DNA from: Asterias rubens | Lineage: Eukaryota | NCBI RefSeq assembly: GCF_902459465.1 | Contig: NC_047071.1 | Span: forward strand, 10,354,001-10,418,000 | DNA length: 64,000 nucleotides | Reading direction: 5' to 3' | Shown here: positions 12,601 through 34,732 of the stretch, piece by piece | How positions within the stretch are numbered: position 1 is the stretch's first letter | Layout of the letters: each line of letters begins with the position of its first letter | Translations under genes and position numbers: made by a program | The notes under the pieces: generated by a model | What the model saw: the letters and a program-made list of their open reading frames with translations, nothing else | The model's database searches: none | What the model was told of the DNA's origin: nothing

Positions 12601-15600
12601 CGGGCATAGTCGTGGTTTTGGCATCACCTTGGGCCTACACATCTAAAACTGACACTTCCTTCTTTATCTTTCTCCCCACAGGGTTTTTGTCTAGTATAGT
12701 GATTAAGTTCACCTTTCTGAGAGACCTTGGCTTCACAACCAGAACTAATAAAGAGCTTAATACACATCCGTGTAAGGGAAAAACCAAATCGTATGCTTTA
12801 TCCCCTAATGCAAAATCTATGAAATGCTAAGGATTCGTACTGCTTTTAGCCATCGACCATGCTCAGTGGTCTAGTGGTAAGACATCTGCTCTATGCAAAG
12901 GTCTTGGGTTTGAATCCCACCCGATTGTATTGCCTAAAAAATAAAATGCAATAAGAGAAACAGAATGATATCAAACCTCTTGTTGCTCCTTCAGTTGCTT
13001 CAGCTGTGCCGCACTCAGCTCAGTCGTTCCGATCATCCCAAAGGAATTAACTCCACTCCCAAGGCTCGATGTCGACGTCCCTCCACTTGCCCCAAACCCC
13101 CAATCATTATCCTCGACCCCCTCTAGTCCGGTCCCTGTACCCCCTACCCCAGCTACCCCAGGGAGCTTGGATGGTGTTGCCCCTCCGCCGACGGAGCTCG
13201 GAGCGATGATGGTGATCTTCGGAGGAGGGATTGCTGGACTCTCTCCGGGTCCGCTGTCTATCCAACGACTTTTACGTTTGCGTCCCTGCGACTGGCTCGT
13301 GGCTCCGGCTGAAACATCAAACACGCACAAAAAGTGAGGTTATCACAGTGGGCCCAATTTCATCACATGAATTCTGCGCTTGTGATCAACATTCTGCGCT
13401 TACTCGGGCAATTGACAAATTTCTGTGCTAGCTGTACATGCAAAGAACGTAACATGGCCTCCATTGCGCACAAGCAGCAATTCAGTGCTAACCTGTGAAA
13501 TACTATGTTGGTTGATGTGGCTGGCTGCTAAAAGTGCCTTTTAATTTTTGCAGCTTGACCACTTTGTCGCTGCATACTTCATAATTCAGCTTCTCAGAGT
13601 AGGGCATTTGGGTTCAAATATTTTTATTATCAGGCTTGACTGGAGACTATCTCTTGATTTAGACCACTCCCTTGTTCAAAGTATTTACCTGATTTTCTCA
13701 TTTCCTGAACAAAGCGTATCTTCTTAGCTAGTCTCAGCTCAACAAGTCTCTTCTGGTAGTACTTATGATCAAGACTGTCACTGTCAAACAGGAACCTAGA
13801 AAATAACAAGATTCATACAAAGACTCTTCTGTTACAATAAAGTATGTGTTACCTTATCGTCTTATCAGCCCTGGAATTTTATCTTTGAGGGGGCAAGGCT
13901 ATTTTTTATTAAAGGAACATACAGAACTGGTAAGAAAAAGTATCGTCTAAGATCACAGATTTACATCAAACTTACACGGTCTAATGATGATAGTAGAAAA
14001 ATCCCTTGAAATATTTCTGTCCCTAATTGTCATAATATTTGATGAGAAATAAATAAAACTAATTTCCTGTTTACAAGGAAGAGCTTATCAGTTGTATGCA
14101 GGATAGAGTTGTTTGGCGCGTCAGACATCAAGCCAGACTCGAACATGCGGCAACGTGACAACTTCGGTCGCCTGAGTGAGTGAGTGAATTTCCTGTTTGG
14201 AGTTTATCGCTCAGTGAGCGTTTTATTAATTTTTTGTAAAACGATGTCATGCAAAACATATTATCAGTTTTAACAATAAAACAATTCTGTAATGTTTCTT
14301 TTAAAAGCAAAGGGCACTTCCGTTTGAAAATCTCAAAGTCTATGAGAAACTTTTGAAGGGGCACCAATGGATATGACCTTGGAAATAGGAGATCCATAAT
14401 TCGGAAAAAGTGGGAGCCACATTGAAAATTGAAATTACTGAAATTAAGGTAAAAAAACAAAAATGACGAAGCTGCTGATTGCCTTGGTATGAACTTACTC
14501 AAACATAGGATCACGTTTGTGCTTCTTCTTGGCTGTCTCTTCAACTGTCAGTCCTCCCTCTGCAACCTCTTCAGCCAGTATGTTGATGGCTTGCAATAGT
14601 TCAGGATCTTCTGGCGGTAAGACTAAAGGCTCCTATAAGTATCGGCATTGGAGGTGGGAGGGAAAACGCCCGCAGGAAGAGCCGTACGTAAAGTCTTGCA
14701 ATTTGAACACATTAACCTTGATGTCTTTATTGTAACTTATAGGTTATCAAAGAACCCAAAACAAATTAACTTTGGTCTCAAGACTTAAGTGCCAAGTGGT
14801 AAAATAAGGAGAGATCTTTAGTTTTGACTTGATAGATTTTGCCATTAACCAACATTCAAGGAAAAGTTTACCTTTGGTTTTTGGAACCGTTTGGTTGTTT
14901 TAATCATATCGAAATGCAGATGTTTACAATAAAACTAACAATCTGGAGTGGTTGTGTCCACGCTGGAAGAATAATCCATAATTGGAATACACAATCTAAG
15001 ACAGTAATGCTTCTCAGTTTTAAAATTAACAGCAAATTTTGACACCCTTTTTACTAAATCTGACAAAAACTTTGGTTAACAGGGTTGTCTTCATTCAAGG
15101 CACAGCAGTGGACAATCAACTTACTTGCATTAAGCCCTTCTTCCTCTTCCTCATCTGAATCTCTGAAGGCACTTGGTTTGGGCACCGGTAACGGCATCTT
15201 GCGAGCTTGAGTAGGTGCTGCGCTGAAGGCTATAGGCTGGGCTGAGGTTGGGGCATACAATGTGGAAGGGGGCGGAGAAGTATCCGGTGCTGGATGCGGG
15301 GAATCTGGCAGTGGGATATCCTTTAGATCTAGAGTTTGGTTTAGCATTGGTGCACTAGAAATACTGGATCCTTTACACACACAAAAATAAGGGGAAAAAA
15401 TGACATGAATTTGATGGTAACCCCACATGTATAGTCCCAGGGAGCTGGGATGGTTTAAGGAATGAAATATATGGCCCAGTTACAAGGGGTATGTAATAAT
15501 GTCCGAAAAACATAACGATCCTTCTTTATAATTGCACAATACATGTATAAGAGTCAATAAACTGTGTGTTGCTTAACTGTGTTCTTATCCATGGCAGTAT

Positions 15601-16592
15601 TTCAGACATAAATTTTTAGACAAAAGATTTAAGCATTCAGAATTTTTTTTATACATTTTCAAACCATTCCTTGAAGCATTTCAAGCATTCTACACCAACC
15701 TCTAGTTTGTCCTGCACTCTGCTCTTGCATCTTGCGGAACTGCTCCAAGAAACTGCCGTCATTGGAGAAAATATTGCGTACAGGCGCGGGGGCGCTGGGC
15801 GGTGCTGCCGGTCGTGGCGGAGGTGCTGGTGATTGAACAGCTGGTGCTGGGGGACGTTGTGCAGCAGCCGGAGGTTTAGGTTGCCCAATGTTGCTGGAAA
15901 AAAAGTTATATTTTTTACGTTATTTGCCATTATCAGAAGTCATTCTTGAGAAAAAAAAAAAAAGATGCAGCGTGCCATAAATTGAGGAAAAGACCAACTA
16001 TTCTGCAGCGTGCCGTGGCTGAGCGGTTTAGAGCTCGGGACTCAAGCTCTGACATTTCTGATCACCAGAGTGTTGATTTAATTCCTCGTCATGGAATTTG
16101 TATCCTATAACTGGTTTGTCCTTCGGACTGGAAATTAAGCCATAGGTCCTGTGTAATAGAATTGATTGTGCTCATATGAAAGTGCCCGGAGCACACACCG
16201 TCGAAGAGTAGGGATTAACCCTGGTGTTTCTGGTTCACAAAGCAAGCACGCTTGTTTACAGGTTTCCTCAGGCTTTTTATCTAGTACTGTGATTAAGTTC
16301 ACTTATGAGGCATCTTTGGCTTCATTACCAAAAATTTATAAATGAAAGTACAAGAGACTAACAATTTTATGCTTCCTGTTGAAGTTTTCTTGGTAGTGCC
16401 AGCCTTGGCTGCCTCTTCAGCCTTCTGTTTCTTCTTTTCTGCCATTTTTCTTTGAATCTCTTGTTTCTTTTGCTCAATAAGACGCTCTTGTTCGCTGATC
16501 GACACCGCCTTAGACTGGCTCAGATCTGGCTGCTGGTTACCCTGGGCCTGGTAACCATGCCAACGAGCTCCTCCAGTGTTACGGAATGACAT
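9644..16592 (-). CDS. SUGP1: SURP and G-patch domain-containing protein 1 (splicing factor 4)
   Basis: Minus-strand exons 16363-16592 (ATG), 15700-15893, 15125-15370, 14499-14622, 13689-13795, 12977-13308, 12233-12416, 11524-11691, 11088-11172, 10360-10495, 9644-9670 (TGA); all phases join. Motifs: [17 protein letters not shown] ([22 protein letters not shown]...[13 protein letters not shown]), RKRKSRW, YDSDED...[23 protein letters not shown]-patch [19 protein letters not shown], and C-terminal [24 protein letters not shown]. The 14622 acceptor was chosen by phase; another AG lies just upstream. Confidence 0.97.
9790..10250. repeat. Degenerate minisatellite (~7 units of 60-75 bp) in the last SUGP1 intron
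   Basis: Recurring GTCACATTGTCA(T)..ATGTCTACAG...AGACCC...TTGGTTCCAGTTCT. Confidence 0.7.
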
Positions 16593-17600: not shown

Positions 17601-17980
17601 GAAATTACTGTTTCAACCTACTGCCGCTAGAGGGCGTTTGTCGGAATTTCCAATCGCAAGCTAGCTGCACATAAATCATAACAAAATAATGCCAGATTTT
17701 ACAAGTAAGTGTTCAAAAACTGTTGACTGTAACAAACACGAGTCAAGTTTGATCATTACTTTATCAATCACAGCTTAAGATTGCGAGATTTTAAAAAACA
17801 ATCAAGCTAAAAAAACTGTTTTTCGTCACTTACTAAAGGCAGGATTTTTATGTTAATTTACTGATGCATTCTTAGTCGTACTTCGGATACGTTTTCGTCA
17901 TAAACCTCTCAAAGTCGAAGAAACGTGTTCAGCAGCACCAGCTCAGGCGGTGATCAGCAGTCACTTTAATTCTCTGCACA
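17560..17980. promoter_or_regulatory. Bidirectional promoter region shared by SUGP1 (-) and SMN (+)
   Basis: Divergent genes with 5' exons within a few hundred bp of each other, local CpG enrichment, a CTCF-like motif CCGCTAGAGGGCG (17624-17636), and an inverted 11-mer pair at 17591-17601 and 17881-17891. Confidence 0.7.
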
Positions 17981-18008: not shown

Positions 18009-21000
18009 ATGAACCAAGCTTCTGCACTTGTCTTTCGTACCGAAAAGGTACATATTATTATGGTTTTTGATACTTTTTTACATTTGAGAATTATTGACAT
18101 TGTTGTTCTTCGACTATTCTTTGAACAATTGGAAGTTACTGCTTTTTTATATAAACGCCTTATTTATACCATTTTATAGGCCCCTATTTATTTTTTAAAC
18201 AATTTTATTAAATTTTAGGAGAATTTAAGCATTATTAATTTATTTGAAAAAATTTCAGTATCCTGCCACCACTTTTTAACCAAACAAAATCTCCTAAAAA
18301 TAGTTATTTGTGAACCCTTTGAATGATAGATTCTAACTAATATTTGGTCAGCCCCGCCCCTGTGCCGTCACTGTGTGTAGTGGCACTCATCATCATGTAC
18401 ATGGATGACATCTTTTTCATCTGCTGGACCAGTGCAGTGATGATGCAAGCCTCACACTTCACAGCGTTCATTTATCTCATAAATTCCTTCCACAGGCACA
18501 GGACCCTCAAGCTTACGAGCGACTCTCAACCAAAGATACCCACCCACCCGTGTCAGAGTTAACACTACAGATAATGGTTTAAAGGGACACGTTGCCTTGG
18601 ATCGGACGAGTTGGTCTAAAAAAGCGTTTGTAACCGTTTGTTACAAAATGCATAAAGATGTTGTACAACTTAAAGTAAAATATAATGATCCACACAAATA
18701 CGCCTTGAAATTGCATGGTTTTCATTTAACATCGTCGACTAACACGGTCGTCCATTTATGGGAGTCAAATTTTTGACTCCCATAAATGGCTGACCGTGTT
18801 ATTTTGCAAAGTAAAAAGGAAACCACAATTTTGAGGCATATTTGTGCAGATCATAGCACTCTACTTTTACATCTTACCAATGCATTTTATAACAAACGAT
18901 TTTTATAGACCAACTCGTCCGATCTAAGGCAACGAGTCACTTTAATCATAGGCCCAGTAACTGGGACGCTGTACTCCTATTTTTTTTTATTATGTTGTCA
19001 TTATCGGCCGTGCTGTACTTTTTTACTTTTTTCGAAACTTTGTTTATCGGTAGAATATACAACCATTTGGTACAATCGATAACAAAATTTTGAAAAAAGG
19101 AGTACAGTATGCCAAGGTGTGCCAGCTTAATCACAGATTCCTCCTTGGTTAAACACACAGATAAATATCAATTCTACATTCAACTAGCTGTCACCCTCAT
19201 TGCCTAATTCAGGGAGTTAGGACCTCAGACATCGTCAAATCTTTTCTGATGATTCTTATTTTATCCACCACTCACACAGGAACTTAAGAAGCGCTTTGTT
19301 TCCAGGGGTCATATCCCCCTAGCAGTCCATCGAGCGATCCAGAAAGTCAAGGCTCGTTCTAGGGAGTCAGTACTTTCCAAAGGACCCAAGCAACAACAGA
19401 GTTCCAAGGGGAAAGTTAATTTTGTTATGACTTTCCACCCCTGAACTTCCTCCCATACGAAGAATAAACAGTTCTAAACATCAAATTCTTCACACATCCG
19501 ATCGACTTCATCAAGGTGCGGTACAGGAAGAACCCATAGTTGCGTACAGACGCCCACCTGTTCATTAGAGTAGGGAGAAACTGTGGATAAGGCGCCTTCA
19601 GACCATTCAACCCCATGGTCTGAACATCCAAGAAGGAGATGACTTCTCCTTCTCCCCACAGATCCACTTTTCTAGCTTGCCTCATTTACTAATCAACTTT
19701 AGCCACCTCTTTCCATGCAAGGGCATCCTACACATACACAGTAGTCATATGCTTTATAAGTTCCGTTTGTGCTTGATGAGTTGATTGTGGTTGAGTTTGA
19801 AATGATGAATAATTGCAATTAACCCAACAGAACTGTCTAAGTCCAAGCATTCTTGGTAGAAGCATTGAGGAAGGAACCATGGTAAGAAGTGAGCTTGTAG
19901 GTGGGCAAACTGGACAGGTGCTGATTATTTTCTTTGTCTCTGTTTTTTGTTTCAGAGTGATGACAATGATGCATCTGATATCTGGGATGACACTGCCTTA
20001 ATCAAAGCATACGACAAAGCCATTAAGTCCATCCAGGTAAGACCATGTCCAGTGTTAAAGTAGATTCATGTGGTGAATGCATACAGAGTACACAGTCAAC
20101 CCTCCTACTGTATGTCCATTCAGTATCATCCATTGTAGTTTTGAATGATACAGACAATGCCAGGCTGCTGCATGTGGTCAATGCATATGTGCATGCACAA
20201 TGGGCCATATTTTTGACCGCATGAGGGCGCTCTCAATCACTTCCGGGGGTATATCATTGATCGCCATTATAACTCGTCAGTATAATGGAGATTAATGGGG
20301 TATATTTATTCATTCATACCCAAAACAGTTGTTAAAGATTGTTACACATTACCAACACAGACATCTAATCCAACATGGACAGTAAGACTTTTAAAAGGAG
20401 CTGTTATAATCCAACTCTAAAGCAAATTGAAACAACGGCACAACAAAACTGACAGAATGCCTATTAATCTGTGCAGGGCGAATCGCGTTTACTCCCGGAA
20501 GTGATCAAAATACTATTTATAGCGCCCTCACGCGGTCAAAAATAAGGCGCATTAGTCCTGTGCACAGTTATGCCACCATGCACAACCCATTAATTTGAAT
20601 GATTTCAAATGAAAAACATGACTAAGAGTAGGCGTAGGAGGGTTAATGTCAACACAATTTTCATTCTTTACAGGGTAGAGGCAGCAATGAAGAAAGTGGT
20701 GAGGTAGAGAATGGCAGAAGCAGTGCCAGTAATGCCAGCAGACGTCGCAAGAGGAAATATTACTCACACCACAAGATGAACCGGAAGAAACAAGGGGTGG
20801 GTTATGATTGTTTGTTTTGTTTGTATGTAACAGTTTGTAAAACAACAAAGACTTATTATTTTAAACAAGCTTTTTACTAAATGTGCTTCTATTTTTCCTC
20901 TCCTAATTACATATTTGTATCTATTGTCCTTATGTCAATGCATTTTTACAGGGCTGTTTATGTCAATGCATTTTTACCGTTATGTCAATGCATTTTAATT

Positions 21001-24000
21001 AACTGTTGTAGGCCTGCTACTGCATTTTTGTCAGTATTTTTACTGTTCTATCTACTGTCTTTATGCATTCTTTAATGTCAATGTTGTATCTACTATCTTG
21101 ATATCGATGCATTTTTAGTGTCTTCTGGCTTTAACTGTTTGGGAAGTCCTGTATTAAAAGCATCTTGTGATTTATTTTATGGATTGTGGTATTTTCTTGC
21201 TTTTACCAGATGTTACAACATGTAGCTTTTTAATCACTGACTAAATATTTTGTATGGATTTAATGGAATGGGCCCATTTAAGTTATAAAATTATTAACGT
21301 GCATTTTTCATCCAATTTAAGATACATAAGAAAAACTGTAAATGCGACAAATTACTAAAAAAAAATTCATATGATCCACACCTTGCAAAGCTTCAAACAT
21401 GTCAAACATCGCTTAAATTAGAATTAGAATTAGAATTAGAATTATTTTATTGTCCACGTTAAATGTAAGATGTTTTTCTGCATTAAGTTGTGTGCGAATT
21501 GAACCTTCAGGAAGCCCATGGCTCTTCTTGTAACCCGTTACATGGTACGTTGATTTTTATTAAAATATCACCAGTGGAAAGTCGGTGATCGTTGCCGTGC
21601 GACATACACGGAGGACGAGTTCATTTACGACGCCGTGATTAAGCTCATCGACAGTGACACGTCTACCTGTTGGGTGACGTACATCGGCTACGGCAATGAA
21701 GAGGAGAAAGAACTGAGTGAACTCATGTCTGCTGGATCGGAGAGTGCCTCCCCATCGAGACCAGTTAATGGAGACTTTGAGGTAGGTTCGGGATGAGTTT
21801 GACTTTACTGTAGATGGGGTGTCGTGGATGGGGGGGATAAGAGCACTGGACTCAAGGTCTGGCGTTTCAGTTAAGCAAAGTGTGGGTTCGAGTCCTGGTC
21901 ATCACACTTGTGTCCTTGAGCAAGACACTTAACTATTTGTGTTTCTCTCCAAGTAAATGGGTACCTGTGATGGCAGAGATAGTTATTGTGATTAGTTGCA
22001 CATACATGTATTTGTTGCGTAGGCTGCACACTCCTCAGAGAGCTGATGAGATGATTTAAGAAATGGCCTTGCCCTCTCAATAGACTGATCCAGTAGGCTC
22101 CACCCACGACGCACGTGTGAGCAAGAACATGTGGGGTTCTCCAATGCCTTTCTGCACAACTCTGCCGCACGCACCAAGCATACGCGCACTCATGTCGGAC
22201 CTTATTGTCGGACCTTTGTTGCGTTGTAATTGGTCAATATGCAATGGGGCGGAGCTTAATGGATCGGTCTATTAGATGAAACTCCATTCATGCATTTATT
22301 ATTTAAAATACCACAACAAAAACTTAGGACATCCAGAATTTTGTGAGTGTACAAAACTTTGAAATCTACCTTTTCTTTGTTTCTTCAACAGGCAGGCTAT
22401 GAATCAATGGACTACCCTAACCACACCCAAAGCCCCGCTCATTCTGGGTCAGAGTTCAGGGGTCAAAACTACAACTCGTATCAAGGTGCACAGGCCTGGC
22501 ACCAACCTCACTCCCAATTCATTCCGCCTGGCCCCCCTCGGATGCATTGGCCGCCCCATCCAATGGTGAGTTTGTTCTACAGTCAGACACGCACAATGTA
22601 CTACTGACCATGACCTATTTTCTGCGCTTACGTCACGTCAAGCATTTTTCATGGGTTAGCAGGGAACTTTGGCTGGTGGGCGTGCAGACTCCTAGGCATT
22701 CTTGCTTACACAGCTAGCGCAGAACTTCTGCGCTTGCCAGTTTTGCGCTTGCCTGCCAGTAGAAATTATATGCGAACTCCTAGGCATTCTCGCTTACACA
22801 GCTAGCGCAGAACTTCTGCGCTTGCCTGCCAGTAGAAATTATATAATTGTTATTTATATTTTCTATGTAATGTTCAAGTTTGTGTTATCTCTTGTATTTG
22901 TATGTGCTTTTGTAGGTTGTTTTTGTCTGGATCACCTTTAGATAGTGATTATTTCGCGTTTTGGTTATCTGCAGGCCCGTTCTCTGTAGTCTTATTTTTA
23001 GTGTTATTTTTCTGTGTACTGTTTGGAAATACCTGGAAATATATAAATAAAATTAAAAATAACAGGGATCGTAAGCAAAGAATTCAGTGGTAAGCAGAGC
23101 CATGAAATTGGGCCCTTGTCACGTTGCTTGTAAAATGAGTGATGTTGTGCATTCCAGGGCACTTCCTGGCAGGCATATGCCAAATTGTTGATGGTCTTAT
23201 TGATTGTTGCGGAAGGTCTTAAACGTTTTATTGTAACTCGTACAAATAAAAGTATTGTGAGACCAGTTTTCATATCAAAAAGTATAACAAAAATGTGTTA
23301 TTTTGGGGATTATTCCAGCAGTGTACATATTGTGCCAGCAGAAAGCATTTATTACCAGATTCACACACTACTTGTACTTTAAAAGCTAACATTTTGTCCT
23401 TTAAATCACACAGCAACCTAGCTTCACTCCACCGAGTATGCCTCCATTTCCTTACTATCCTGGCAGTGGGTTTATGCCCCAGGTAAATAAACATAATTCA
23501 CTCTTTGCAAGCAAACATATAAGTCATTTGTTAAAAGTTTTGCATTAATTATAGCATTTTAGCCTTGTTTTTGATGAACTTGCATAACAGTTATCTGTTT
23601 TTTGAAACACACATACATGTAGGCCTGCACACTTGCATTTTTGCATCCCTGTGGAGACATCTTTTGTTCTTTCATTTGTCCCTGTAGTTGATAAACTCCC
23701 ATAGATACAATGTATGTCCCCAAATTCATTGCGAGGGACCCGTCTTTAGCATCCCCCTATTGAGATTTTGTGTGTTCCCTTTTCTGTTTTTTTTTTCTTG
23801 TTTTTCTTCCATTCTCCATAAGGTTTTGTGAGTATGAAATCACACACTTAAAGTCACCTGGAAGTGGTATTTTTTCAAAATAAAGCTTTTGTCACTAATA
23901 TATGTGTTTTGATGAGTGGAATGTGAATAAACAGTTAACTAAGGTTTTAAAAAATCAGTTCTTATGTTATTTACAAATTTAAGAGTAGACCCCGACCCGA

Positions 24001-25308
24001 GAGGGCGCTGTTTGTGACGTCAACCGAGGCAGACTTTGCCTGTAATGCGTAGAGTAAACGCAATTGCAAAGTACATGTACGGACCAAGTCGTGAGTTTGT
24101 AAGTTTCAACAACAAAAAAATTGGGTTTTTTTCGGCAATGCCGACCAGGTGTATTGCTGCTGAATGCAGAAAAACACTTTTTGAAATGTACCAACTCACG
24201 ACTTGGACGTACATGTACTTTGCACGTGTGTTTACTATATGCATTGCAGGCAAAGTCTGCCTCGATTGACGTCACAAAAGGGGTAGGCGGAGTCAGCCCC
24301 CCAAACAACTTCATATATTTTTTAAACATATAAATTGTGACAAACAATTACTAAAAAAATTGTTTTATTGTTCGTAAGCATATACTCTTATGTTTGAAAG
24401 AAAAACAATTTTATTTCCAGGTGACTTTAATTAGTTCATCAACTAAATTTAACACCTAGGCCTATTTAACAGCAGTAACATATTTTTTTACTTTCTTGAT
24501 GATGTCTGGCTTCTCCATTTTAAAACAGCCATGAATTGCTACATACACTGTTTTTATGTCTCCTCCTTACAGGGTTTTGGAATGCCTCATATACCCTCCA
24601 TGATACCTCCTCCACCACCGATGTCTACACCTCCCGAGGTACACCAAGAGGGTAATGAGGAGGCTCTCCATTCCATGCTAATGTCTTGGTATATGAGTGG
24701 GTATCACACCGGTTACTACCAGGTAATTTAGAACTCGTGGAATTCTCAGCAGTTCACTAGCAACCAATTCCAGAAAATCTTTAAAATGAAAAATACTCCT
24801 ATTTCATTTTCTCAGTAATAAGGTGTTAATTTGTATTCCCAAAGTGTTCCTATAAAATCATCCAGTGAGGGGCCAGTTTGGTGGCATAATGAGATAACCA
24901 GTGTGTACGATGTGATTAAGACAATGGAAATATAAATAAAAATATTATATATTTGTAATGTTTTTAAATGTAAATTTTTTGTAATTCAGCCTTAGTACTG
25001 CGAGGACAGGTTTTAAAATCCATTTTATCTATCTATTTATTTATCTATCCACCATTAAAATATGTCAGCATGTGCCGACAGTGTCCCTCACTGCAGGGTT
25101 CTAAATGAACTTATGACGAAGAACAAAGTTAAGACTATGGGTGATCAGCTGGTTTATAATTTCCCAATTGTTAATTTTTTTTGTTTTCCCCCAGGGATTG
25201 AAACAAGGGAGATCATCCTTTCATTCCGCCTCTCCTAGAATGCCAGAAAGTAGAAGACAATCAGAGCGCCAGTCAAGACCAAGAAATAGTGGTGCTCAAT
25301 CTAGATAG
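18009..25308 (+). CDS. SMN1: Survival motor neuron protein (SMN), 295 aa
   Basis: All phase-0 exons 18009-18047 ([13 protein letters not shown]), 19956-20036 (Gemin2-binding [16 protein letters not shown]), 20674-20796 (basic), 21575-21781 (Tudor [22 protein letters not shown]...[11 protein letters not shown]), 22392-22565 (Pro-rich), 24573-24722 (PPPPP and YG box [17 protein letters not shown]), 25195-25308 (GLKQ...TAG). The exon layout parallels human SMN. Confidence 0.97.
18398..19750 (+). mobile_element. Decayed Penelope-like retroelement reverse transcriptase, interrupted by MITEs, in an SMN intron
   Basis: Frameshifted peptides in PLE order: [10 protein letters not shown]...FIYLINSFH...LKLTSDS (18398-18520), [17 protein letters not shown] (~19150-19205), [12 protein letters not shown]...FVMTFHP (~19275-19440), [11 protein letters not shown]...[11 protein letters not shown] (~19480-19560). 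Confidence 0.75.
18579..18945. mobile_element. TTAA-flanked MITE, family B (~36-bp TIR)
   Basis: TTAA-AGGGACACGTTGCCTTGGATCGGACGAGTTGGTCTA...TAGACCAACTCGTCCGATCTAAGGCAACGAGTCACT-TTAA. Confidence 0.85.
20204..20548. mobile_element. MITE with a ~28-bp TIR plus an internal ATCACTTCCGGG inverted block
   Basis: GCCATATTTTTGACCGCATGAGGGCGCT...AGCGCCCTCACGCGGTCAAAAATAAGGC; TSD not clear. Confidence 0.7.
21817..22095 (+). mobile_element. tRNA-derived SINE with a CORE-like central block; copies at 11840-11995, 16006-16235, 42277-42368
   Basis: Head ...TAAGAGCACTGGACTCAAG...GTGTGGGTTCGAGTCC (B box), followed by TGTGTCCTTGAGCAAGACACTTAAC...GTAAATGGG, which resembles the MIR/CORE consensus TGTGACCTTGGGCAAGTCACTTAACC...GTAAAATGGG. 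Confidence 0.7.
22683..22841. repeat. Imperfect ~85-bp tandem duplication in an SMN intron
   Basis: ACTCCTAGGCATTCT(T/C)GCTTACACAGCTAGCGCAGAACTTCTGCGCTTGCC...TGCCAGTAGAAATTATAT occurs twice. Confidence 0.85.
23848..24430. mobile_element. TTAA-flanked Kolobok-type element, family C, with a long internal foldback (24013-24275)
   Basis: TTAA-AGTCACCTGGAA...TTCCAGGTGACT-TTAA. Internal arms TGTGACGTCAACCGAGGCAGACTTTGCCTG / CAGGCAAAGTCTGCCTCGATTGACGTCACA. Confidence 0.85.
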
Positions 25309-27598
25309 CAATGGCCTCATCTCATCTTGTCTCATCTACTGACATTCATCTCACAGTGTTTTTCTAACCAGGAGCTTCAAAGATACTCCCAAGAGGCAAA
25401 TCTTGAAGAGAAAACTGAATTGCAAAGAGTACTGTATGTGATGCGATCGAGCTAAATGAGTCACTGGCTGTGAAAATATCAGCTTGGAGAAGAAACAGGC
25501 CAAAACAAGCAAATGGATGTGAAATTGTCATCATCAAAAAAATGATTTTATTTTAATGCAAAATTTGTTTTTACTTTTTTCAACTTCCTTTCTGATAAAT
25601 AATATCAAAAACAGGTTAAAATTAGCTTTTCTGGTTGTTTCTACTCTCATACATGTGTAACTTTTGAACTAAAGGTGGTATCAGCATGGGGTTTTAAGGG
25701 TATTAAATCATTATGCTCGTTTCAAATGTATTGAAGAAAGATATTGAATGTTCTTAGTCGACAAGCGACTTATTTTGCTCGAGCGCATCACTTATATTAT
25801 TTTCCACTTGCAACCTATGCAACAACAATAAGACGAGATTAGCCCTCCATCAGAGCTACCAACTCTCCCTCATTCTGCAGAAAATATTCCAAAAAAAAGC
25901 AAATCTTTCCGTGTTCTGTTGAGCTAGTTTGACAATCGCCCTGATCGTGGAAGCCTTTCCCCCGTTATGTTGAATGTATATTTCTTAATATCTCACACAT
26001 TGTTATCTATATTGTGAAGGAAGGGGGGGTCTGCTGTTGTCTGGTCATTTATTTGTGCTGTCAACTGGAGACGAGTTAGTAACAAGTTAATTCAAATAGT
26101 GGACCCACGGTGTCAGGCCTGAATTCTGTGCTTGAGAGGGCAAGGCAGTTTTTCCTTGGTAAGGGCACCTCTATGAGGGATGTGTAAATCTCTTGACCGT
26201 TTGTACAACGCACTTACACACAGCTATCCTGTCCACCAATTTGCGAGTCAAAAATAATTGGATTCCCAAAATGGTACTACGCTCTGTACGGTTGTGCGTT
26301 CCATGCAGTGCAAGGGAACAACATTGGAACATGTTTGTGAAGGGCACAAAGGCAGTGATATTAGGGGCATAGAGGCAAGTGTTTCAGTTTGGTAGGAGGC
26401 CTGGGCTCGATTTCGCAAAGCACCAAGGTTCATCGTAAGACAAGTTGTCAGTATCGCCAGTGAGCAACTACAATTGATTTGCAGTTAAGATCAATCGTAG
26501 CTCTTAGTGAAATCGGCCTGTGGACTTCATACCATTGTAAAACCAGTTACATGTAATGTTTAACTTAATACTATTTTTAATAAGCGTTTGTGTGAAATAA
26601 AACTACGGTACAAAAATTATTGATTTGTTTATTTTTATTTCGTGTTAAATCTGTACAGGGGTATAAACTGAAGTCAAAAAGCTACTTGCGGTGATGTTTT
26701 GTACCAAGTTACATATCTGATTGCAGAGATGAATACAACTCGGTTATGAAAAGCAAAATATTTACAGAATTTGTCAAGAAATTATTGTTTTCCCTTGTAA
26801 TACGAGATTGACCCTTAGCCATAATGAACCAGCACCACGGACCTTTTTTTTTTATGCAAAAAAAGAAGAAATTGGTAGAACATGAAAGTACTTACATGCA
26901 TAACAATTTTGGACACTCAATGATCAGATCATTGCCAAAAATGTCTGGCATTAACCCTCATACAAACAGGTACCATAGACTTCCACTCAGAGCAGTCTTC
27001 AGTCCAACATGTTCAAATAAAACAGATTGCTAGAGTAAAGGCCGAGTGTGTGCGTACGTATTCTAGTGGAGCGATTCAACCAACAGATTGTAGTTTGTGC
27101 CGTGATCGCCATCGTTCAGGTGTGGATGGATTGAGGTTTTATACCCAGTGCTTTTTTTTTTCCAAATTGACTTATCCAATTGTTTTTTTCATAACTAATA
27201 CTAAGCATTCATGATTGAGGTTTTGCTTTATTGTTTCAAAATACCCAACTGACCTCAGAATTACCATATTATGAGGGACAAGGGAACTTGCATCAGAAAC
27301 ACAAACACATACATGACATAGAACTAACACAAGGCACCAAATATTGGCTTGAAATAGAAGAGTAATTATCTATATTTGTACAAGAAGTAAACGTGAAAAT
27401 CAAAGGGATTTATTTGAAGCTTAATAACAGCAAATTTATCTGGTTCATCCGTTGAGATATAAAAGTATTTCGTCTGCCCATCTTTCTTTGTACAATAGTC
27501 GCACCCAGATGCTCCCAGTAGACAAAGGGTGAATGTTTTGCCAGGGATATTTGTTGTTGCTGCCCTTTCTCTGCCGATTTCATCTAGGAGCTTAGCGT

Positions 27599-29901
27599 TT
27601 ACTTCTTTGGGGGTTTGGCCCCTTCCTCTTTTTTTTCATTTGCTTTCTGCTGCTTCAAACGCATGGCCTCGGCATCTCTGAAAGAACAAACAAAAAAGTG
27701 CATTATGTTATTTCAAGGTATTACACAGGATTGGTAAGAACAAGAAACACAACGAAACAATCAGACAGCTTTCAGACTTTAAACTAAAACAAAAATTAGT
27801 TTTAGTCTGAAAACTTTCTGTTTATTTTGTTGTTCATATAAACACCATGTTTTGTATGTGAAATGAAGTCATATTAAAAAAAAAGTATCAGAAAACCTAA
27901 ATAAGATTTTGCAGCTGATATCGGTTGTTACAACCAATATTATTGACAATATGTTTACAAAAATGGTGCATGGTTTTGCACCATTTTCTCATGACTCACA
28001 CAATGGATTAAGCCCAAACTTCCACAGGTCTGTTATTCATGTATTCTTATGTTTGATCACACAAAACTTGAATACTGTATGCAACTATTGGTCAGCTCAC
28101 CACCAATCCTGTATAACACCTTTATAACACTGGTTATATTGCTATTTGATGGCGCAGGGAGCTCAATGAAATATAAAACCCAGGAAAAATCCTGACAAGT
28201 CAAAGCGATGAAAGATTTGGGAAAGAAATCGGCAGAATATGGGAATAAAATATTTGTAACCTACACTGTAACTATTTAACTACAAAGTGTGACAAGAATC
28301 TTAATTTTTGTTTACCTGTGACGTCTGTCCTCCAGGCTTTTCCCATCCCCTTTTTTCTTTCCTTGTTCTTGTTTCTTCTGATTTTTCGCCCTCGCAAGTT
28401 CTCTCTGGTTTCCACCTGAATTTAACCAAACAAAACATACACACAGTGTAAAAGTAATGAGTACAGATAGAAAGATAGTCTTTCTAAGAGCTTTCAATCA
28501 GTGTGCAATACAACTTTACCATTTCTCATTGCAAAACCACTTACACATAATTTATGATGTATATATCTGCAAATTTTTCTAAACTAGCTTACAAGTTAAA
28601 GCAGAGGTTTATTTTTTTTTCGGCCTGGAATAACTTCACTTCGAAGTGACCTCAATTTCTTTGTTATATGGATGGCTGATATATTTCCCATGCTTTGTTT
28701 TACCCAATCACAGAGGGACAGCAGGTCCTGAAATTTATGCTCCCACCCATTCCAATTATTTCCCTTTTCAGGTGGTCGTTGTGTAATCCCAAAACTTCCA
28801 GACCTTTGTCTTTTTATACAAAGGCGGCTTACAAGAATGGACACTCGGGCAGTGTTGTAGCCACGGTGGGCAATGCTTGGCAAGCCTGCCCAGGACTAAC
28901 AAATTTCGCACAGCACTCTGAGCAAAAAAGCTGTGCTGTCAAGAGCGCAGATTTCCCCCAGATTGCACTTACAGTCACTCAGTGTTACAGCAATGATGGC
29001 CCTATACAGTGTTATATGATATCTAACTTGGTGTACCAAATTGGATTTAAGACCCACCACTAAAATTGGTCTAGATACAACCATGGAGTACAACACTGAC
29101 TGACTGCCACCATTAATTATCATAACAATGCATTCATAAAGTGCGATGCCAATGGAGATATTCAAGTCCAACTCCAAGCTTGGCAAGATTACTTTTTACA
29201 GCATGCCAGGATGGCAGATCAAACATAAATAAGTAAATGACTTTTAACTGTGGCTGTGTCACTGTCAGTCACTCATATAATATTAATTGTTCAGTTGTAA
29301 ACAAGCATTCAATAATTGTGCAAGTAACAATCATTAATGAATAAAGTTATTGTATTTACATTAAATACGATAACTTTTTATTCATTAATGATTGAATGAA
29401 ATTGTAAATTTGTTTGTAAATTACAAACAAAATTTACAATTTCATTCAATTCAATCGATGATTATTTATTGATTTGACTTGGTGATTACACCATTATAAT
29501 TATTATATATTGATTTTTTGATTTTTTTATTATAATTTAAATCAAATAAGCAAACATTCCATACAAAAAAATTGCAAAAAATGGCGCTATACTCCAGAGT
29601 GAAATAACACACAAAGTAATTATCAGGGATAACACGAGATTTATACAAAATCAGTTTTAAAACCATGAGTCGGTGCTATTTTATTTTGTGTAACTGTGCA
29701 CTGGACTATGTAACTGTATGTTTAGTGTTTAGTGAAGTAAACTCTGTGTGTGTACACATGAATACCCGTACGTAGTACACATTTCCGTGTCCGATACCGA
29801 TCCTGTCAGTTATTTAATCAAATGAGATAATCTTTTGATAAAAATGAGCGAAAAAGTGGTGGCAGGATACGGAAATCTCCCCGAGTCTACTTACGTGTCA
29901 T
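27599..29901 (-). CDS. SERF: Small EDRK-rich factor (SERF1/SERF2/MOAG-4 family), 61 aa
   Basis: Exons 29895-29901 (ATG ACA C|GTAAGT), 28316-28415 and 27599-27677 give [61 protein letters not shown]. This carries the [11 protein letters not shown] signature and the 7-nt first coding exon. Confidence 0.95.
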
Positions 29902-31288
29902 TCTGATATGAGTTTATGTCACAATATCACCGGAAAATGACAATTTCAACCGGGCTTACTGCATATATCGCTGACGTTTCAATAGCCAATTATTTGCTAT
30001 CTGATATTTAGTGCATGGTACCGAAACTCTTGTCCTCACTGTTCGGTTTAATTTTAACGTGGTATGTGTTTCCGAGGAGAGTGGGTACCAGACGATTAAA
30101 ATAGTAAAAGGGCGCCCTCATCGCCAGTCATAAGTGAAAAACTAATTATTGCTTGTGACGACTGGGAGTCATTCTGACTATGATGAGCCTTTTTGTGAGG
30201 AAAGTGGGGCTTGAGAAGGGATTTCTTGAAAATCCCTTAAAATAAGGGCTTTTTATAAAAACGGTAAAAACAATGGATATTAATAGAGGTTATAAGTAAC
30301 ATATATGAGGATACACAGACATGTTTAAGCAATGCATACAATAGTGGTAGCCTCCTGAGCGGTCGAAATTAGATTTCACATCCTCAAAACTAAAGCACTG
30401 TCAGATGAGAGCCCTTTAGGAAGACCTTTAAATGTTCCAAGATCCAATCCTTTTTCTTGGAGATACGGCCGATCATAAGTGCATTTTATTGTTACTCTGT
30501 GTCAGTTTCGTGTAGGCTATACAAACAAATGCTTGTGAACACTGTAAGCGCAGATGAATTTTTGAGAAAGGTCAAAATGAATTTTTGAGAAAGGTAAAGT
30601 ACAATCTATTTTGCCATATCCATAGCAAAAATAAGAACGTGTAAAAAGAGGCTGAAATAGGACCACTTCCAAAGCACTCCATTGGAAACTTTGAAGCGGA
30701 AACATTGAAGTGCTGAATATTTCTCAACTTATTCAGCGTCTTCATTTTAGTGGTAGCTAGGCCTACATCCCCGGCCCTGCCTGGCGCCACTGTTGATGTG
30801 AATACGCATAGCCATAATTTTAAAGAGATTTTCAGCCCTGTCCAATATTATTATTATGCTGTATAAAAAAACACATTTCTTGTTATAGAAATTCGCGCCT
30901 AAGCAAGATCGATCTTGAACTATCACAATGTTGCGGTGTGTTGTATACACATGCACTTTTTCATTGTTTGTCATCAAACATTGTGGTTAATGACGTCATG
31001 TGCAATCCATTTATTGCGTCAGCAGATTGTACGCGCGCGTGTGACGTACATTACAGGATCTATATCTATACGATCTATATACGCGCAGTGATTGTACGCG
31101 CACATGCTCTAGCTCATTGTTGCTATGACGTTATTTCTTGTTTTGGTATCTTAGCAAAACACAAGTTTAGTAACATGTGAATTCGATGTCAACACCTTTA
31201 TTCACCATAATAATGGTGGCAAAATACGATGCGACAAGCTTAAATGCCGGTACTCTGGTCATTACCAATTTGAAGCCTATTGTCCGCA

Positions 31289-34200
31289 ATGCGAAGGTGG
31301 AAAAACAGGAAACGAAATGCCCCTACACAACAAGGGAACACAGCACAGACGAAGAATTCTACCACCACCAACCAACGGCCGAATGATTCTGTTACCCAGC
31401 TGCAGAAGGGCTCTGTCAGCAAGCTGCAGAAGGGTTCTGTCAGCAAGTTGAAGAAGGGTTCTGTCAACACCAAGGAGTCTGTGAGTCTTCCGCAAGTAGA
31501 ATCTTTAGAACATGATCTCACGTCGGGACCATCCCAGCCCAACAAGGCGCCAGTATCGAACCCACCGAAAGGAATGGTGTTGTCAGAGCCACCAGAGTTG
31601 CAATTGAAACTTAGCACGCTGCTGGAGGTATCTCATCCAAATGTTGTACTCCCATCGTCCGACGCTCTTCACTCCGAGCACGTGCTCGTGGCAATGGCCG
31701 CACTGTGGAAGAAGAAACAACTGAACGACGTGGTGCTGGCCATTGGACCACACCGGATTGGAACCCATAAACTAATCCTTGCCGCTTGCAGTGGATACTT
31801 TCTGGAACTCTTTACGAAGGACGGAGTTGGAGACAGCGATGACGAGTTCCTGTACACGCTTCATGGTATCTCCTTCGAGACTCTCAAACTGCTCCTGGAG
31901 GCGATGTACACGGGTCACTTCTCCGTAGACTCTTCTCGACTCGAGGAGATACTCTCGGCAGCCGTCTATCTCAAACTGTCCTTTGCACTCAAAATTTGTA
32001 GCGATTTCATGATCGGAAGCTTGAATACGCACACCTGCTTGAGAACTTTAGGGTTGGCTACTGTATTCGGCTTGACGCGAGTGATTGATAAAGCATTTGA
32101 AATGGCGTCCAGAAATTTCTCCCTGGTTGCTGATACTCCGGATTTCTTGGAGTTACCAGAGAAGACTCTGATGACTCTTATATCCCGGGATGACTTGGTC
32201 GTGGACACCGAGCTGAGTGTCTTCCAAGCAATGCTACGTTGGATTGACGTTTACCGTGAGGTACGGCTGGACCACGCTTCCCTGCTCCTTGAGAATGTCC
32301 GTCTCCCGATGATCAAGCCTCCGGACCTCGTGGACCACGTGGAAAGCGTTGAGTACCTCATGAGACTCCCCGAATGTGAGGCTCTGGTGAAGGAGGCACT
32401 TCACTATTACTGCTTGCCTCTACGGCAGAGCATTATGCAGTCTAAGCGGACTACTCCTCGGTCTACAGTACACCTTACCACCATGGTGGCGCTGGGTGGA
32501 CATCCTCGTCTGGCTAAACAACCAGTGGGGAATGTCTTGATGTACTACAACTCCAACACAAATGAATGGAGAATGCTTTCCAAAATGATTCACCCGAGAC
32601 ATCATCATGCTGGTAAGTTATCTGACCTTTTTCCGAATGTGTACAAGCGATGTACACGGGATCCCAACCCAAATGCCACCAAATTAAAGGTAAACAAAAT
32701 TATGAGCAAGGTGGTGGGTAAACTTTTGGTAATATATTTTCTTTAATAGAAACACAGACCATACATGTGTGGTTAAACTGTAAGTTGACTATAACTTAAG
32801 GTGATTACCCGACCTTACAATACATAATGATGAACAACTTAATTTAAAACGCACAGTTTAGTTATAATACGCGAGGGTGCAGGCGGATCAGCCAACTTAT
32901 GCTTGCAAACTCTAGCATATTGTGCAATACGGCCTTTAACCGACGGAGACTGTTATCATTATTCCATTGTCCCCCATTTTCAGCTGCCGTCCTGGGCGGA
33001 TTTCTGTACGTTGCTGGTGGGAGGGAGGTTCTTAACAGCCCAGACGCCCCGTTGAAATCAGGTCATAGATACGACCCACGTACGGACTCGTGGATTCAAA
33101 TTGCAGACATGCGCAACGCGAGGGAGAGCTTCCAGATGGGAGTGGTGGATGGAATGATCTATGCTGTTGGTGAGTGGTCATTGTCTCTTAGATTTCCATT
33201 GTCAATGTTTTGATTTTTCAACCCCGCACCTCACTTTTCCTCTTCGGGCAGTGTGGTAGGGCTGCAGAGACTCTCCAGTTTACACTACAAGTTTGGATTA
33301 ATATTCCATGACTTCCATTTTCTCTGCAGTACGCCTTCACGTTGTTCTCAGCCGTCCTACCTTCCTCTTGCCTTCATGAGTGTCATTGCTTTCCTGCAGT
33401 GGCCTTTAAACGTGACCAATCCACTTCCATCTTCCAAAATGTTTTTTACTCAGCACTGTGTGATTTGTATGATGATGGCATGGGTGGCTTGTCAATTTCG
33501 CCACTGTACACGGGGGACACGGGTTTGTCTCCTCCCCTTGTGGTGTTATTTTGTTTTTACTCATACCAGTTTCTCAACGAATTTATGGACCAATTTTAGG
33601 AGGACGTATGAATAGCGATTCGTCATTGGCTGCCGTGGAGAGATACAACCCAAACACCGACCAATGGGAAGACAGGGCACCACTTTCAACTCCTAGACGA
33701 TGTGTTGCTGTCGCTGTGCATGATGGAAAGTTGTATGCCGTGGGTGGATCAGGTGACAACAACTAAAATAAAAAATTATTTTTATGTTGAAAGAAACTTT
33801 TTAAAACTCGTCACTTTGACGGTTTTCAAAGCAAGGGTTTTCAAACCACGGGCCTTTTGAAATAATATCGTCACTATTATGCTGGTTTTACACCAAGGGC
33901 TCGTTAAAATCTCGTCACTATGCCGGTTTCAAACCACGCACCTTTTTACTCGTCACTATGCCGGTTTTATAAAAACTAAGCTGGTTTATAACCACGGGCC
34001 TTTTCAAATCTCGTCACTTTGCTGGTTTTTAATCCGCGAGCAATTTTCCGGGTTAGCCCAACCAAGGAAAGGGTCAGCTACGCTTGGACCCAAAATCCGG
34101 GTCAATTCTGACCCGGGATGAGTGTATAGAGTGATCCAATACCATTTGTAGGCCTACTAGTAATTTGCAATACTTAAAATATGATGGTGAAGGTAGCACT

Positions 34201-34732
34201 TAAACTAATTACATAACAAAGTTCATGGGCTTTCGTAGCAACAACTATTTCATCAGATGCAATTAGTTATGCCTTTTGTATTATGTTTAACACAGGAAAC
34301 AAGAAAATATCCAATAAGGTTGAGGTTTACTTGCCCCGCTCCGACACATGGAAGACGAAAAAAGACTTGAAGTCACCACGATTCTTCTCCCACTTGTCAT
34401 CCGTTGGGGATTACCTCTACCTGGCTGGCGGTGCCGAAGTCGACCCTACCGGGGGAGGAGTTCGGTGTGTCCCGCATATCCAACGCTACGACCCTGTCAA
34501 GGACACGTGGACCAAACTGAGAGCTATGAGGCAGCCCCGGGCCGAGGCGGCAAGCTGCGTAGTGGGTACCCGCATCTACGTCATAGGGGGGTATTGCTGG
34601 GACAAGAAATCCTGGCTTCGGTCTGCCGAGTGTTACGATGTAGAGGCGGACGAATGGACAGACGTTGAGGATTGCACAAACGCTTACACTGGAATGGCTT
34701 GCTGCTGTTTAACACTTCATAAACTTCCCTGA
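31289..34732 (+). CDS. Kelch-like protein (BTB-BACK-6x Kelch; probable CUL3 substrate adaptor), resembling the KLHL9/13/26/36 group; orthologue not assigned
   Basis: Exons 31289-32612, 32984-33169, 33600-33752, 34296-34732, with phase-1 introns. BTB (LNDVVLAIG...HKLILAACSGYF), BACK (LPEKTLMTLISRDDLVVDTELSVFQAMLRWI, LLENVRLPMI) and Kelch GG/Y/W repeats (LYVAGG...RYDPRTDSW, IYAVGG...VERYNPNTDQW). The first ATG is at 31289 with an in-frame TGA at 31271; an upstream exon cannot be excluded. Confidence 0.9.
33809..34030. repeat. Degenerate repeat with about five TCGTCACT...GGTTTT units in Kelch-gene intron 3
   Basis: TCGTCACT(A/T)TG(C)CGGTTT and AAACCACGGGCCTTTT recur. Confidence 0.6.

What the first reader, a model, noticed from the sequence alone, without database searches (positions are those of the whole stretch)
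18009..29901. SMN and SERF are immediate neighbours, as in the human SMA locus
Seen: SMN (+, stop 25308) and SERF (-, stop 27599) are adjacent and convergent, with stops ~2.3 kb apart. Established (from memory): human SERF1A lies directly next to SMN1 in the duplicated 5q13 SMA region, upstream and co-oriented, and is often co-deleted; SERF/MOAG-4 modulates amyloid aggregation. Inference: the linkage may predate the chordate-ambulacrarian split and have survived a local rearrangement, hinting at shared regulation. Convergent 3' UTRs could also overlap.
Basis: partly seen in the sequence, partly recalled or inferred. Interest (0 to 1): 0.7.

Follow-up and report, generated by a model that had tools for sequence, protein, structure and literature searches.

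The report
Starfish SMN and SERF: ancient neighbours
In the starfish Asterias rubens the SMN and SERF genes lie tail to tail 2.3 kb apart, an arrangement shared with another starfish, a feather star and an acorn worm, so it is at least as old as that whole animal group, but whether it is the same linkage as SERF1-SMN1 in the human SMA locus is likely and not shown.

Summary
The window is from Asterias rubens. It carries an intact 8-exon SMN gene (+, 18009-25308), whose translation equals the NCBI protein exactly. It also carries an intact 3-exon SERF gene (-, 29901-27599). The two are convergent, with stops 2,290 bp apart. Both are the only copies found in this genome.

The same SMN-then-reversed-SERF arrangement, with spacers of 1.7-3.1 kb, occurs in Patiria miniata, the crinoid Antedon mediterranea and the hemichordate Saccoglossus kowalevskii. 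A SUGP1-like gene usually sits head to head with SMN, and PC4 follows SERF in two species. The block is therefore ancestral to Ambulacraria. No SERF lies within 10 kb of SMN in a sea urchin, a brittle star or a scallop.

The chordate link stays open. Zebrafish and paddlefish SMN loci keep human 5q13 neighbours (MCCC2, BDP1, NAIP) but have no SERF. Amphioxus, sharks and non-mammalian tetrapods could not be tested.

Spliced transcript contigs cover the whole starfish spacer. The two 3' UTRs therefore meet or overlap, but strand information is lacking.

This is a new example of conserved microsynteny, of moderate interest. The scan had noted this same stretch once before (s1-150670).

The parts
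11517..15800 (-). SUGP1-like (Surp + G-patch) gene, head to head with SMN. Only the part seen by comparison is given.
   Evidence: tblastx shows it collinear with the annotated Surp/G-patch gene of Patiria L001:1-7824, and it also matches Saccoglossus L006. A weak Surp hit lies at 13684-13797. A 57-aa exon at 11522-11692 is 100% identical to Patiria.
18009..25308 (+). SMN gene, coding part, 8 exons: 18009-18047, 19956-20036, 20674-20796, 21575-21781, 22392-22565, 23414-23482, 24573-24722, 25195-25308.
   Evidence: All introns are GT-AG. The translation equals P0004 (A. rubens SMN-like, 318 aa). Pfam G2-BD, Tudor and YG-box hits. The last intron joint is seen in 4 runs. It is the only YG-box locus in the genome.
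25309..26560 (+). SMN 3' UTR, the minimum extent shown.
   Evidence: One spliced contig (X1 record 4) runs from exon 7 through exon 8 to 26560. Other runs reach 26253 or 26608 by contigs that overlap by 30 bases. An AATAAA lies at 26596-26601 on the + strand.
26561..26936 (.). Transcribed stretch that cannot be assigned to either gene. The two transcription units meet or overlap here.
   Evidence: Contigs 26476-26862 (X13, X14) and 26640-26935 (X1) cover it at exon-like depth, while the introns are nearly empty. AATAAA hexamers lie on opposite strands at 26596-26601 (+) and 26628-26639 (-).
26863..27114 (.). 252-bp segment that is polymorphic among individuals, inside the SERF 3' UTR.
   Evidence: The joint 26862>27115 with 13 other letters between is seen in X13 and X14. 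X1 has a 26-base insertion at 27114.
26937..27598 (-). SERF 3' UTR, the minimum extent shown.
   Evidence: One spliced contig (X1 record 6) runs from exon 2 through exon 3 down to 26937.
27599..29901 (-). SERF gene, coding part, 3 exons: 29901-29895, 28415-28316, 27677-27599. The product is 61 aa.
   Evidence: Splice sites and translation. Pfam SERF-like_N. Both intron joints are seen in 4 runs, and the 5' UTR reaches at least 29979. The only other PF04419 locus in the genome is ZNF706-like.
31280..34732 (+). BTB-BACK-Kelch (KLHL-type) gene, divergent from SERF. It occupies the place that PC4 holds in the crinoid and the hemichordate.
   Evidence: Pfam BTB, BACK and Kelch hits.

Best explanation
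Shown. The window holds the single-copy SMN and SERF genes of Asterias rubens in a tail-to-tail pair. The pair belongs to a small gene block, SUGP1-like (-), SMN (+), SERF (-), that was already present in the last common ancestor of echinoderms and hemichordates. In that ancestor PC4 (+) probably followed SERF.

Inferred. The block has mostly survived passively. The spacer between the stops is only 1.7-3.1 kb, and in the starfish it is filled by the two 3' UTRs. Almost any breakpoint there would damage one of two housekeeping genes, and these genomes rearrange slowly.

Inferred, at odds of about 0.55-0.6. The mammalian SERF1-SMN1 pair descends from the same ancestral linkage. This needs an inversion of one gene, the two vertebrate genome duplications splitting SERF into SERF1 (kept beside SMN) and SERF2, and loss of SERF1 in ray-finned fishes.
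For: Genes and orientation. Identity with the A. rubens protein. Spliced transcripts.

Same arrangement elsewhere:
- Patiria miniata (L001): SMN ends at 17800. An unannotated but intact SERF lies on the - strand with exon 1 at 23473, exon 2 at 21.8-21.9 kb and its stop at 20170. A Surp/G-patch gene lies upstream.
- Antedon mediterranea (L005): SMN ends at 13559, the SERF (-) stop is at 15259, and PC4 (+) follows.
- Saccoglossus kowalevskii (L006): Surp/G-patch (-), SMN (+), an annotated SERF-like_N gene (-) at 20622-24041, then PC4 (+).

Copy number: A. rubens has one SMN locus and one true SERF locus. The best PC4 match is on the same chromosome, 0.93 Mb away.

Passive retention: SUGP1-SMN is kept in 4 of 6 ambulacrarians, the same rate as SMN-SERF. 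No non-coding conservation is seen in the spacer between the two starfish.

Mammals: SERF1A/B is consistently co-phased with SMN and followed by NAIP (PMC11927269). Read-through SERF1-to-SMN transcripts show SERF1 upstream and co-oriented (bioRxiv 10.64898/2026.01.14.699191).

From my own knowledge, not tested here: human SMN1/SERF1A (5q13), SERF2 (15q15) and SUGP1/2 (19p13.11) lie on three arms of the lectican/HAPLN/MEF2 fourfold paralogy group. That is what a duplicated ancestral SUGP-SMN-SERF block would leave behind.
Against: No SERF lies within 10 kb of SMN in Lytechinus variegatus, Amphiura filiformis, Pecten maximus, Danio rerio or Polyodon spathula (tblastn and motif scans).

In the paddlefish, BDP1 lies 0.9 kb upstream of SMN and NAIP lies downstream. 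This is clearly the orthologous locus, yet it has no SERF.

The orientation differs between starfish and mammals. Amphioxus, cyclostomes, sharks, amphibians and sauropsids were not examined. The 10-kb flank limit means 'absent' is only 'not an immediate neighbour'.
Confidence: 0.6

Rival explanations
1. The ambulacrarian block is ancient, but the mammalian SERF1-SMN1 adjacency arose independently. On this view SERF1 is a later duplicate of SERF2 that was inserted between BDP1 and SMN1 in the tetrapod or mammalian lineage, so the resemblance to the starfish is coincidence.
For: Both ray-finned fishes sampled have the orthologous SMA-type locus without SERF: MCCC2-like upstream of SMN in zebrafish, and BDP1 / SMN / NAIP in paddlefish. 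The orientation differs from the starfish. No non-mammalian vertebrate with the adjacency was found.
Against: Two named genes becoming immediate neighbours by chance has odds of roughly 1 in 10,000 per genome, or about 1 in 1,000 if they already share a chromosome. SERF1 keeps its introns, so it is not a retrocopy. By my recollection the SERF1/SERF2 protein divergence is larger than expected for a mammal-age duplicate. Only one actinopterygian loss is needed under common descent.
Confidence: 0.35
2. The pair is held together by selection. The convergent 3' UTRs overlap and form sense-antisense transcripts, or the genes share 3' end and chromatin regulation, coupling the expression of SMN and SERF. 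This rival concerns the mechanism of retention and could hold alongside either history.
For: RNA-derived contigs tile the whole 2.29-kb spacer while the introns are almost empty. Contigs 26476-26862 cross the poly(A) signals predicted on both strands. Tail-to-tail orientation and a 1.7-3.1 kb spacer are kept in four species. In humans the two genes are also transcriptionally linked by read-through.
Against: The contigs carry no strand, so overlap is not shown. No conserved non-coding sequence lies in the spacer between Asterias and Patiria. The pair was lost in a sea urchin and a brittle star without loss of either gene family. The neighbouring SUGP1-SMN pair is equally well conserved, which points to generally slow rearrangement.
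Confidence: 0.2
3. The adjacency is a chance or assembly feature of this one genome.
For: None found.
Against: The same arrangement occurs in three independent assemblies of other classes and another phylum. Transcripts confirm both genes.
Confidence: 0.01

Closest known systems
Human and mouse SMA locus (SERF1A/H4F5 - SMN1 - NAIP, 5q13.2)
   Same: SMN and a SERF gene are immediate neighbours. In both cases SERF is a three-coding-exon gene for a lysine/arginine-rich protein of about 60 aa that begins M-[TA]-R-G-N-Q-R-E-L-A-R.
   Different: In mammals SERF1 lies upstream of SMN1 and is co-oriented with it, and read-through transcripts occur. In the starfish SERF lies downstream and the genes are convergent. 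NAIP, BDP1 and MCCC2 are not in the starfish window. The starfish gene is the single pro-orthologue of both SERF1 and SERF2. Ray-finned fish loci lack SERF.
Ancient conserved microsyntenic gene pairs and blocks across metazoans (Irimia et al. 2012, PMC3514665; Zimmermann et al. 2022, PMC8851819)
   Same: Unrelated genes are kept adjacent over more than 500 My in slowly rearranging genomes. The block is small (3-4 genes) and its orientation is preserved.
   Different: This pair was not found in the texts or the held supplements of those surveys. No regulatory-block evidence is seen here, such as conserved non-coding elements or a developmental 'trans-dev' gene. Both genes are housekeeping genes.
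Convergent gene pairs with overlapping 3' UTRs (cis natural antisense transcripts)
   Same: The genes are tail to tail, the spacer is fully transcribed, and poly(A) signals on opposite strands lie about 30 bases apart.
   Different: Overlap of transcripts from opposite strands is not demonstrated, because only unstranded contigs were available.

Membership tests
SMN (survival motor neuron) orthologue | N-terminal Gemin2-binding domain | tested here: met
   PF20636 at 1.8e-12 on exon 2.
SMN (survival motor neuron) orthologue | SMN-type Tudor domain | tested here: met
   PF06003 at 1.1e-5 on exon 4. The exon retrieves SMN proteins of other animals.
SMN (survival motor neuron) orthologue | Proline-rich stretch followed by a C-terminal YG box | tested here: met
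   PF20635 at 2.9e-15. It is the only YG-box locus in the genome. The best hits to the full-length protein are named SMN across animals.
SERF / 4F5 / MOAG-4 family | Short (about 60 aa) charged protein with the SERF-like N-terminal domain and no zinc finger | tested here: met
   PF04419 at 3.1e-7. The product is 61 aa. The only other PF04419 locus is ZNF706-like and carries a CxxC finger start.
Ancestral ambulacrarian microsyntenic block | The same orthologous pair is adjacent in lineages that split at the base of the group | tested here: met
   Asteroidea (two orders), Crinoidea and Hemichordata.
Ancestral ambulacrarian microsyntenic block | The same relative orientation and a comparable spacing | tested here: met
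   All four are convergent. Stop-to-stop spacers are 2,290, 2,369, 1,699 and 3,086 bp.
Ancestral deuterostome SMN-SERF linkage (homologous to the mammalian SMA locus) | Adjacency present in chordates outside mammals (amphioxus, cartilaginous or ray-finned fishes, other tetrapods) | tested here: not met
   Absent within 10 kb in zebrafish and paddlefish. The shark look-up gave no DNA. Amphioxus and other tetrapods could not be reached.
Ancestral deuterostome SMN-SERF linkage (homologous to the mammalian SMA locus) | Adjacency in mammals | not testable with these tools
   Taken from the literature only: PMC8348669, PMC11927269 and bioRxiv 10.64898/2026.01.14.699191.
Ancestral deuterostome SMN-SERF linkage (homologous to the mammalian SMA locus) | SERF1 and SERF2 are products of the vertebrate genome duplications, so SERF1's place is ancestral | not tested
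   This rests only on recalled human map positions (5q13, 15q15, 19p13.11 paralogy). No paper was found.
cis-natural antisense (overlapping 3' UTR) pair | Transcripts from opposite strands share sequence | tested here: inconclusive
   The spacer is fully covered by RNA contigs and the proven UTR ends are at most 376 bases apart. No strand information is available.

The most novel reading that the evidence does not exclude
The SMN-SERF linkage has been kept since the deuterostome ancestor in both ambulacrarians and the mammalian line because the two genes are functionally and transcriptionally coupled. The coupling would be antisense 3' overlap in invertebrates and read-through in humans. That would give independent evolutionary support to SERF1 (H4F5) as a true partner or modifier in the SMN pathway, rather than a bystander that is merely co-deleted in severe SMA.
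Probability: 0.15. Interest if true: 0.7.

Novelty: new member of a known kind. Interest (0 to 1): 0.4.

Why it matters
SERF1A/H4F5 was proposed in 1998 as a modifier of spinal muscular atrophy, mainly because it sits beside SMN1 and is co-deleted with it. Its role has never been settled. This work shows that the single invertebrate SERF gene has sat next to SMN since before echinoderms and hemichordates diverged. That makes the linkage much older than the human duplicated region. It also turns 'is the neighbourhood meaningful?' into a testable question in experimentally tractable animals such as starfish and acorn worm embryos. If the linkage proves to be only slow genome rearrangement, it is just one more conserved gene pair.

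Tried and rejected
1. A protein search with the SERF exon-2 ORF returned only four candidates, all exon-only ORF calls from unnamed contigs. No SERF orthologue list could be built.

2. Look-ups that returned nothing usable:
- the A. rubens protein itself (withheld);
- Ptychodera flava isoform X2;
- a bird isoform X2;
- great white shark (no DNA, no neighbours listed).
All 12 context look-ups were then spent, so amphioxus, sea cucumber, priapulid and cnidarians were not examined.

3. The genome search cannot reach animal genomes other than the window's own.

4. Literature: no paper was found on SMN-SERF synteny outside mammals. The supplements of two microsynteny surveys and of the hemichordate chromosome paper hold no SMN, SERF or SUGP entry, or are not held.

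5. My first 7-exon SMN model missed a 69-bp exon (23414-23482). It was corrected against P0004.

6. Contig depths were not used to infer co-expression, because the tool warns against that.

7. No complex prediction was run, since I do not claim that SMN and SERF bind each other.
Full report
**What is there.** The window has no N. On the + strand there is an 8-exon gene with GT-AG introns: 18009-18047, 19956-20036, 20674-20796, 21575-21781, 22392-22565, 23414-23482, 24573-24722 and 25195-25308. Its spliced translation is identical over all 318 residues to P0004, named by NCBI 'survival motor neuron protein-like [Asterias rubens]'. Pfam recognises the Gemin2-binding domain, the SMN Tudor domain and the YG box on separate exons.

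On the - strand there is a 3-exon gene: a 7-base first coding exon at 29901-29895, then 28415-28316 and 27677-27599. It encodes a 61-residue protein that begins [11 protein letters not shown] and hits SERF-like_N. The stops face each other across 2,290 bp (25309-27598).

**Copy number and surroundings.** The window is G000:C11:10354001-10418000. The genome has one YG-box locus, which is this one. It has two SERF-like_N loci: this one and a ZNF706-like gene on another contig. The starfish SERF is therefore the single counterpart of vertebrate SERF1 plus SERF2.

Upstream of SMN, head to head, lies a SUGP1-like Surp/G-patch gene at about 11.5-15.8 kb on the - strand. It is collinear by tblastx with the annotated gene of Patiria. 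Beyond SERF, divergent from it, lies a BTB-BACK-Kelch gene at 31280-34732, and a methyltransferase exon lies at 41.1-41.7 kb.

**Transcripts.** Four public runs of the same species contain contigs that skip the last SMN intron (24722/25195) and both SERF introns (27677/28316 and 28415/29895). The introns have almost no coverage, so these runs are RNA.

- One contig joins SMN exons 7 and 8 to 26560, giving a 3' UTR of at least 1,252 nt.
- Another contig joins SERF exons 2 and 3 to 26937, giving a 3' UTR of at least 662 nt.
- The remaining 376 bases are also covered, by contigs 26476-26862 and 26640-26935.
- AATAAA signals lie at 26596-26601 on the + strand and at 26628-26639 on the - strand. 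These would place the two cleavage sites within a few tens of bases of each other.

The transcription units therefore abut or overlap. Contigs carry no strand, so overlap is likely but not shown. A 252-bp segment (26863-27114) is absent in some individuals.

**Comparative survey.** I anchored on SMN proteins named by their sources, fetched 10 kb on each side, and searched the DNA for SERF with tblastn and a motif scan.

Species with the pair:
- Patiria miniata: Surp/G-patch (-), SMN (+), and an intact but unannotated SERF (-) whose stop lies 2,369 bp from the SMN stop.
- Antedon mediterranea (crinoid): SMN (+), SERF (-) 1,699 bp away, then PC4 (+).
- Saccoglossus kowalevskii (hemichordate): Surp/G-patch (-), SMN (+), an annotated SERF-like_N gene (-) 3,086 bp away, then PC4 (+).

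The 7-base first coding exon of SERF is also conserved in Patiria and Saccoglossus. Crinoids branch at the base of living echinoderms and hemichordates are the sister phylum. The block SUGP1 / SMN / SERF (/ PC4) was therefore present in the ambulacrarian ancestor. In A. rubens the best PC4 match is on the same chromosome 0.93 Mb away, consistent with a local rearrangement.

Species without SERF within 10 kb of SMN:
- Lytechinus variegatus, where a GPCR gene is the downstream neighbour.
- Amphiura filiformis, where SUGP1 is kept upstream and a MAM-domain gene lies downstream.
- Pecten maximus.

SMN-SERF is kept in 4 of 6 ambulacrarians sampled, and so is SUGP1-SMN. No non-coding similarity is detectable in the spacer between the two starfish. 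These points favour slow, passive retention of a compact block over a special constraint on this pair.

**Chordates.** The literature confirms that human SERF1A/B is part of the duplicated unit with SMN, NAIP and GTF2H2 (PMC8348669). It is consistently co-phased with SMN, and SMN1 is followed by NAIP (PMC11927269). SERF1 lies upstream and co-oriented, and read-through SERF1-SMN transcripts occur (bioRxiv 10.64898/2026.01.14.699191). An inversion of one gene alone converts the starfish layout into this one.

The two ray-finned fishes I could examine lack SERF at the orthologous locus.
- Zebrafish: a carboxyltransferase gene (MCCC2-like), a discoidin-domain gene, SMN, then a NOS gene.
- Paddlefish: a BDP1-like gene 0.9 kb upstream, SMN, then a BIR-NACHT (NAIP-like) gene.

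The shark look-up gave no DNA, and amphioxus was out of reach. Two histories remain.
- (a) Ancestral linkage, with SERF duplicated in the vertebrate genome duplications, SERF1 kept beside SMN and later lost in ray-finned fishes.
- (b) A later duplicate of SERF2 that landed beside SMN1.

I favour (a) at roughly 0.55-0.6. Chance re-creation of an immediate adjacency of two given genes is very improbable. From my own knowledge, untested here, human SMN1/SERF1A (5q13), SERF2 (15q15) and SUGP1/2 (19p13.11, beside NCAN and HAPLN4) lie on three arms of the well-known 1q/5q/15q/19p paralogy group. That is the pattern expected from a duplicated SUGP-SMN-SERF block.

**Comparison with known things, and novelty.** This is a conserved microsyntenic block of the kind catalogued by Irimia et al. 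2012 and later surveys. I found no mention of this pair in those texts, in the supplements that are held, or elsewhere. It is a new member of a known kind.

The claim that it equals the human SMA-locus adjacency fails one membership test, because non-mammalian chordates sampled lack it, and other tests could not be run. I therefore do not file it as shown. The scan had noted this same stretch once before (s1-150670), without follow-up.

**Verdict.** An ancient ambulacrarian linkage is well supported (about 0.9). Homology with the mammalian linkage is likely but open. Co-regulation is unsupported, and UTR contact or overlap is probable. Interest is moderate at 0.4.

Noticed in passing
L002 and L003 (Lytechinus variegatus CM031019.1, 22.74 Mb and 27.96 Mb): Two SMN loci 5 Mb apart on one chromosome encode the same 357-aa protein, each with the same GPCR gene about 8 kb downstream. 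The aligned DNA is about 97.7% identical. This is either an uncollapsed haplotype or a recent segmental duplication of SMN, which would be a curious parallel to the human locus.
   Followed up: partly
window 11522-11692 (-): A 57-residue exon of the SUGP1-like gene is 100% identical in protein between Asterias and Patiria. That is far above the 68% identity of SMN between the same species.
   Followed up: partly
window 24300-24496: Inside an SMN intron, RNA contig depth is about 100 times that of the SMN exons in three runs (about 40,000 against about 400). This looks like a highly expressed repeat or small RNA family whose copies lie elsewhere.
   Followed up: no
window 26863-27114: A 252-bp presence/absence polymorphism lies in the SERF 3' UTR region. 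In two runs it is replaced by 13 other letters, and another run has a 26-base insertion at 27114.
   Followed up: no
window 41135-41701 (+): A long exon encodes a class I SAM-dependent methyltransferase domain (Methyltransf_31/11/25, down to E 9e-30). Its orthology was not determined.
   Followed up: no
L009 (Polyodon spathula) and L008 (Danio rerio): Fish SMN loci keep neighbours of the human 5q13.2 region: BDP1-like and NAIP-like in paddlefish, and MCCC2-like in zebrafish. The SMN-NAIP adjacency therefore predates the split of ray-finned and lobe-finned vertebrates.
   Followed up: partly
G000:C17:5176260-5176370 (L010): The only other SERF-like_N locus of the genome is a ZNF706-like gene. 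Its product begins MARGQQKIQSQQK and a CxxC finger start follows.
   Followed up: partly
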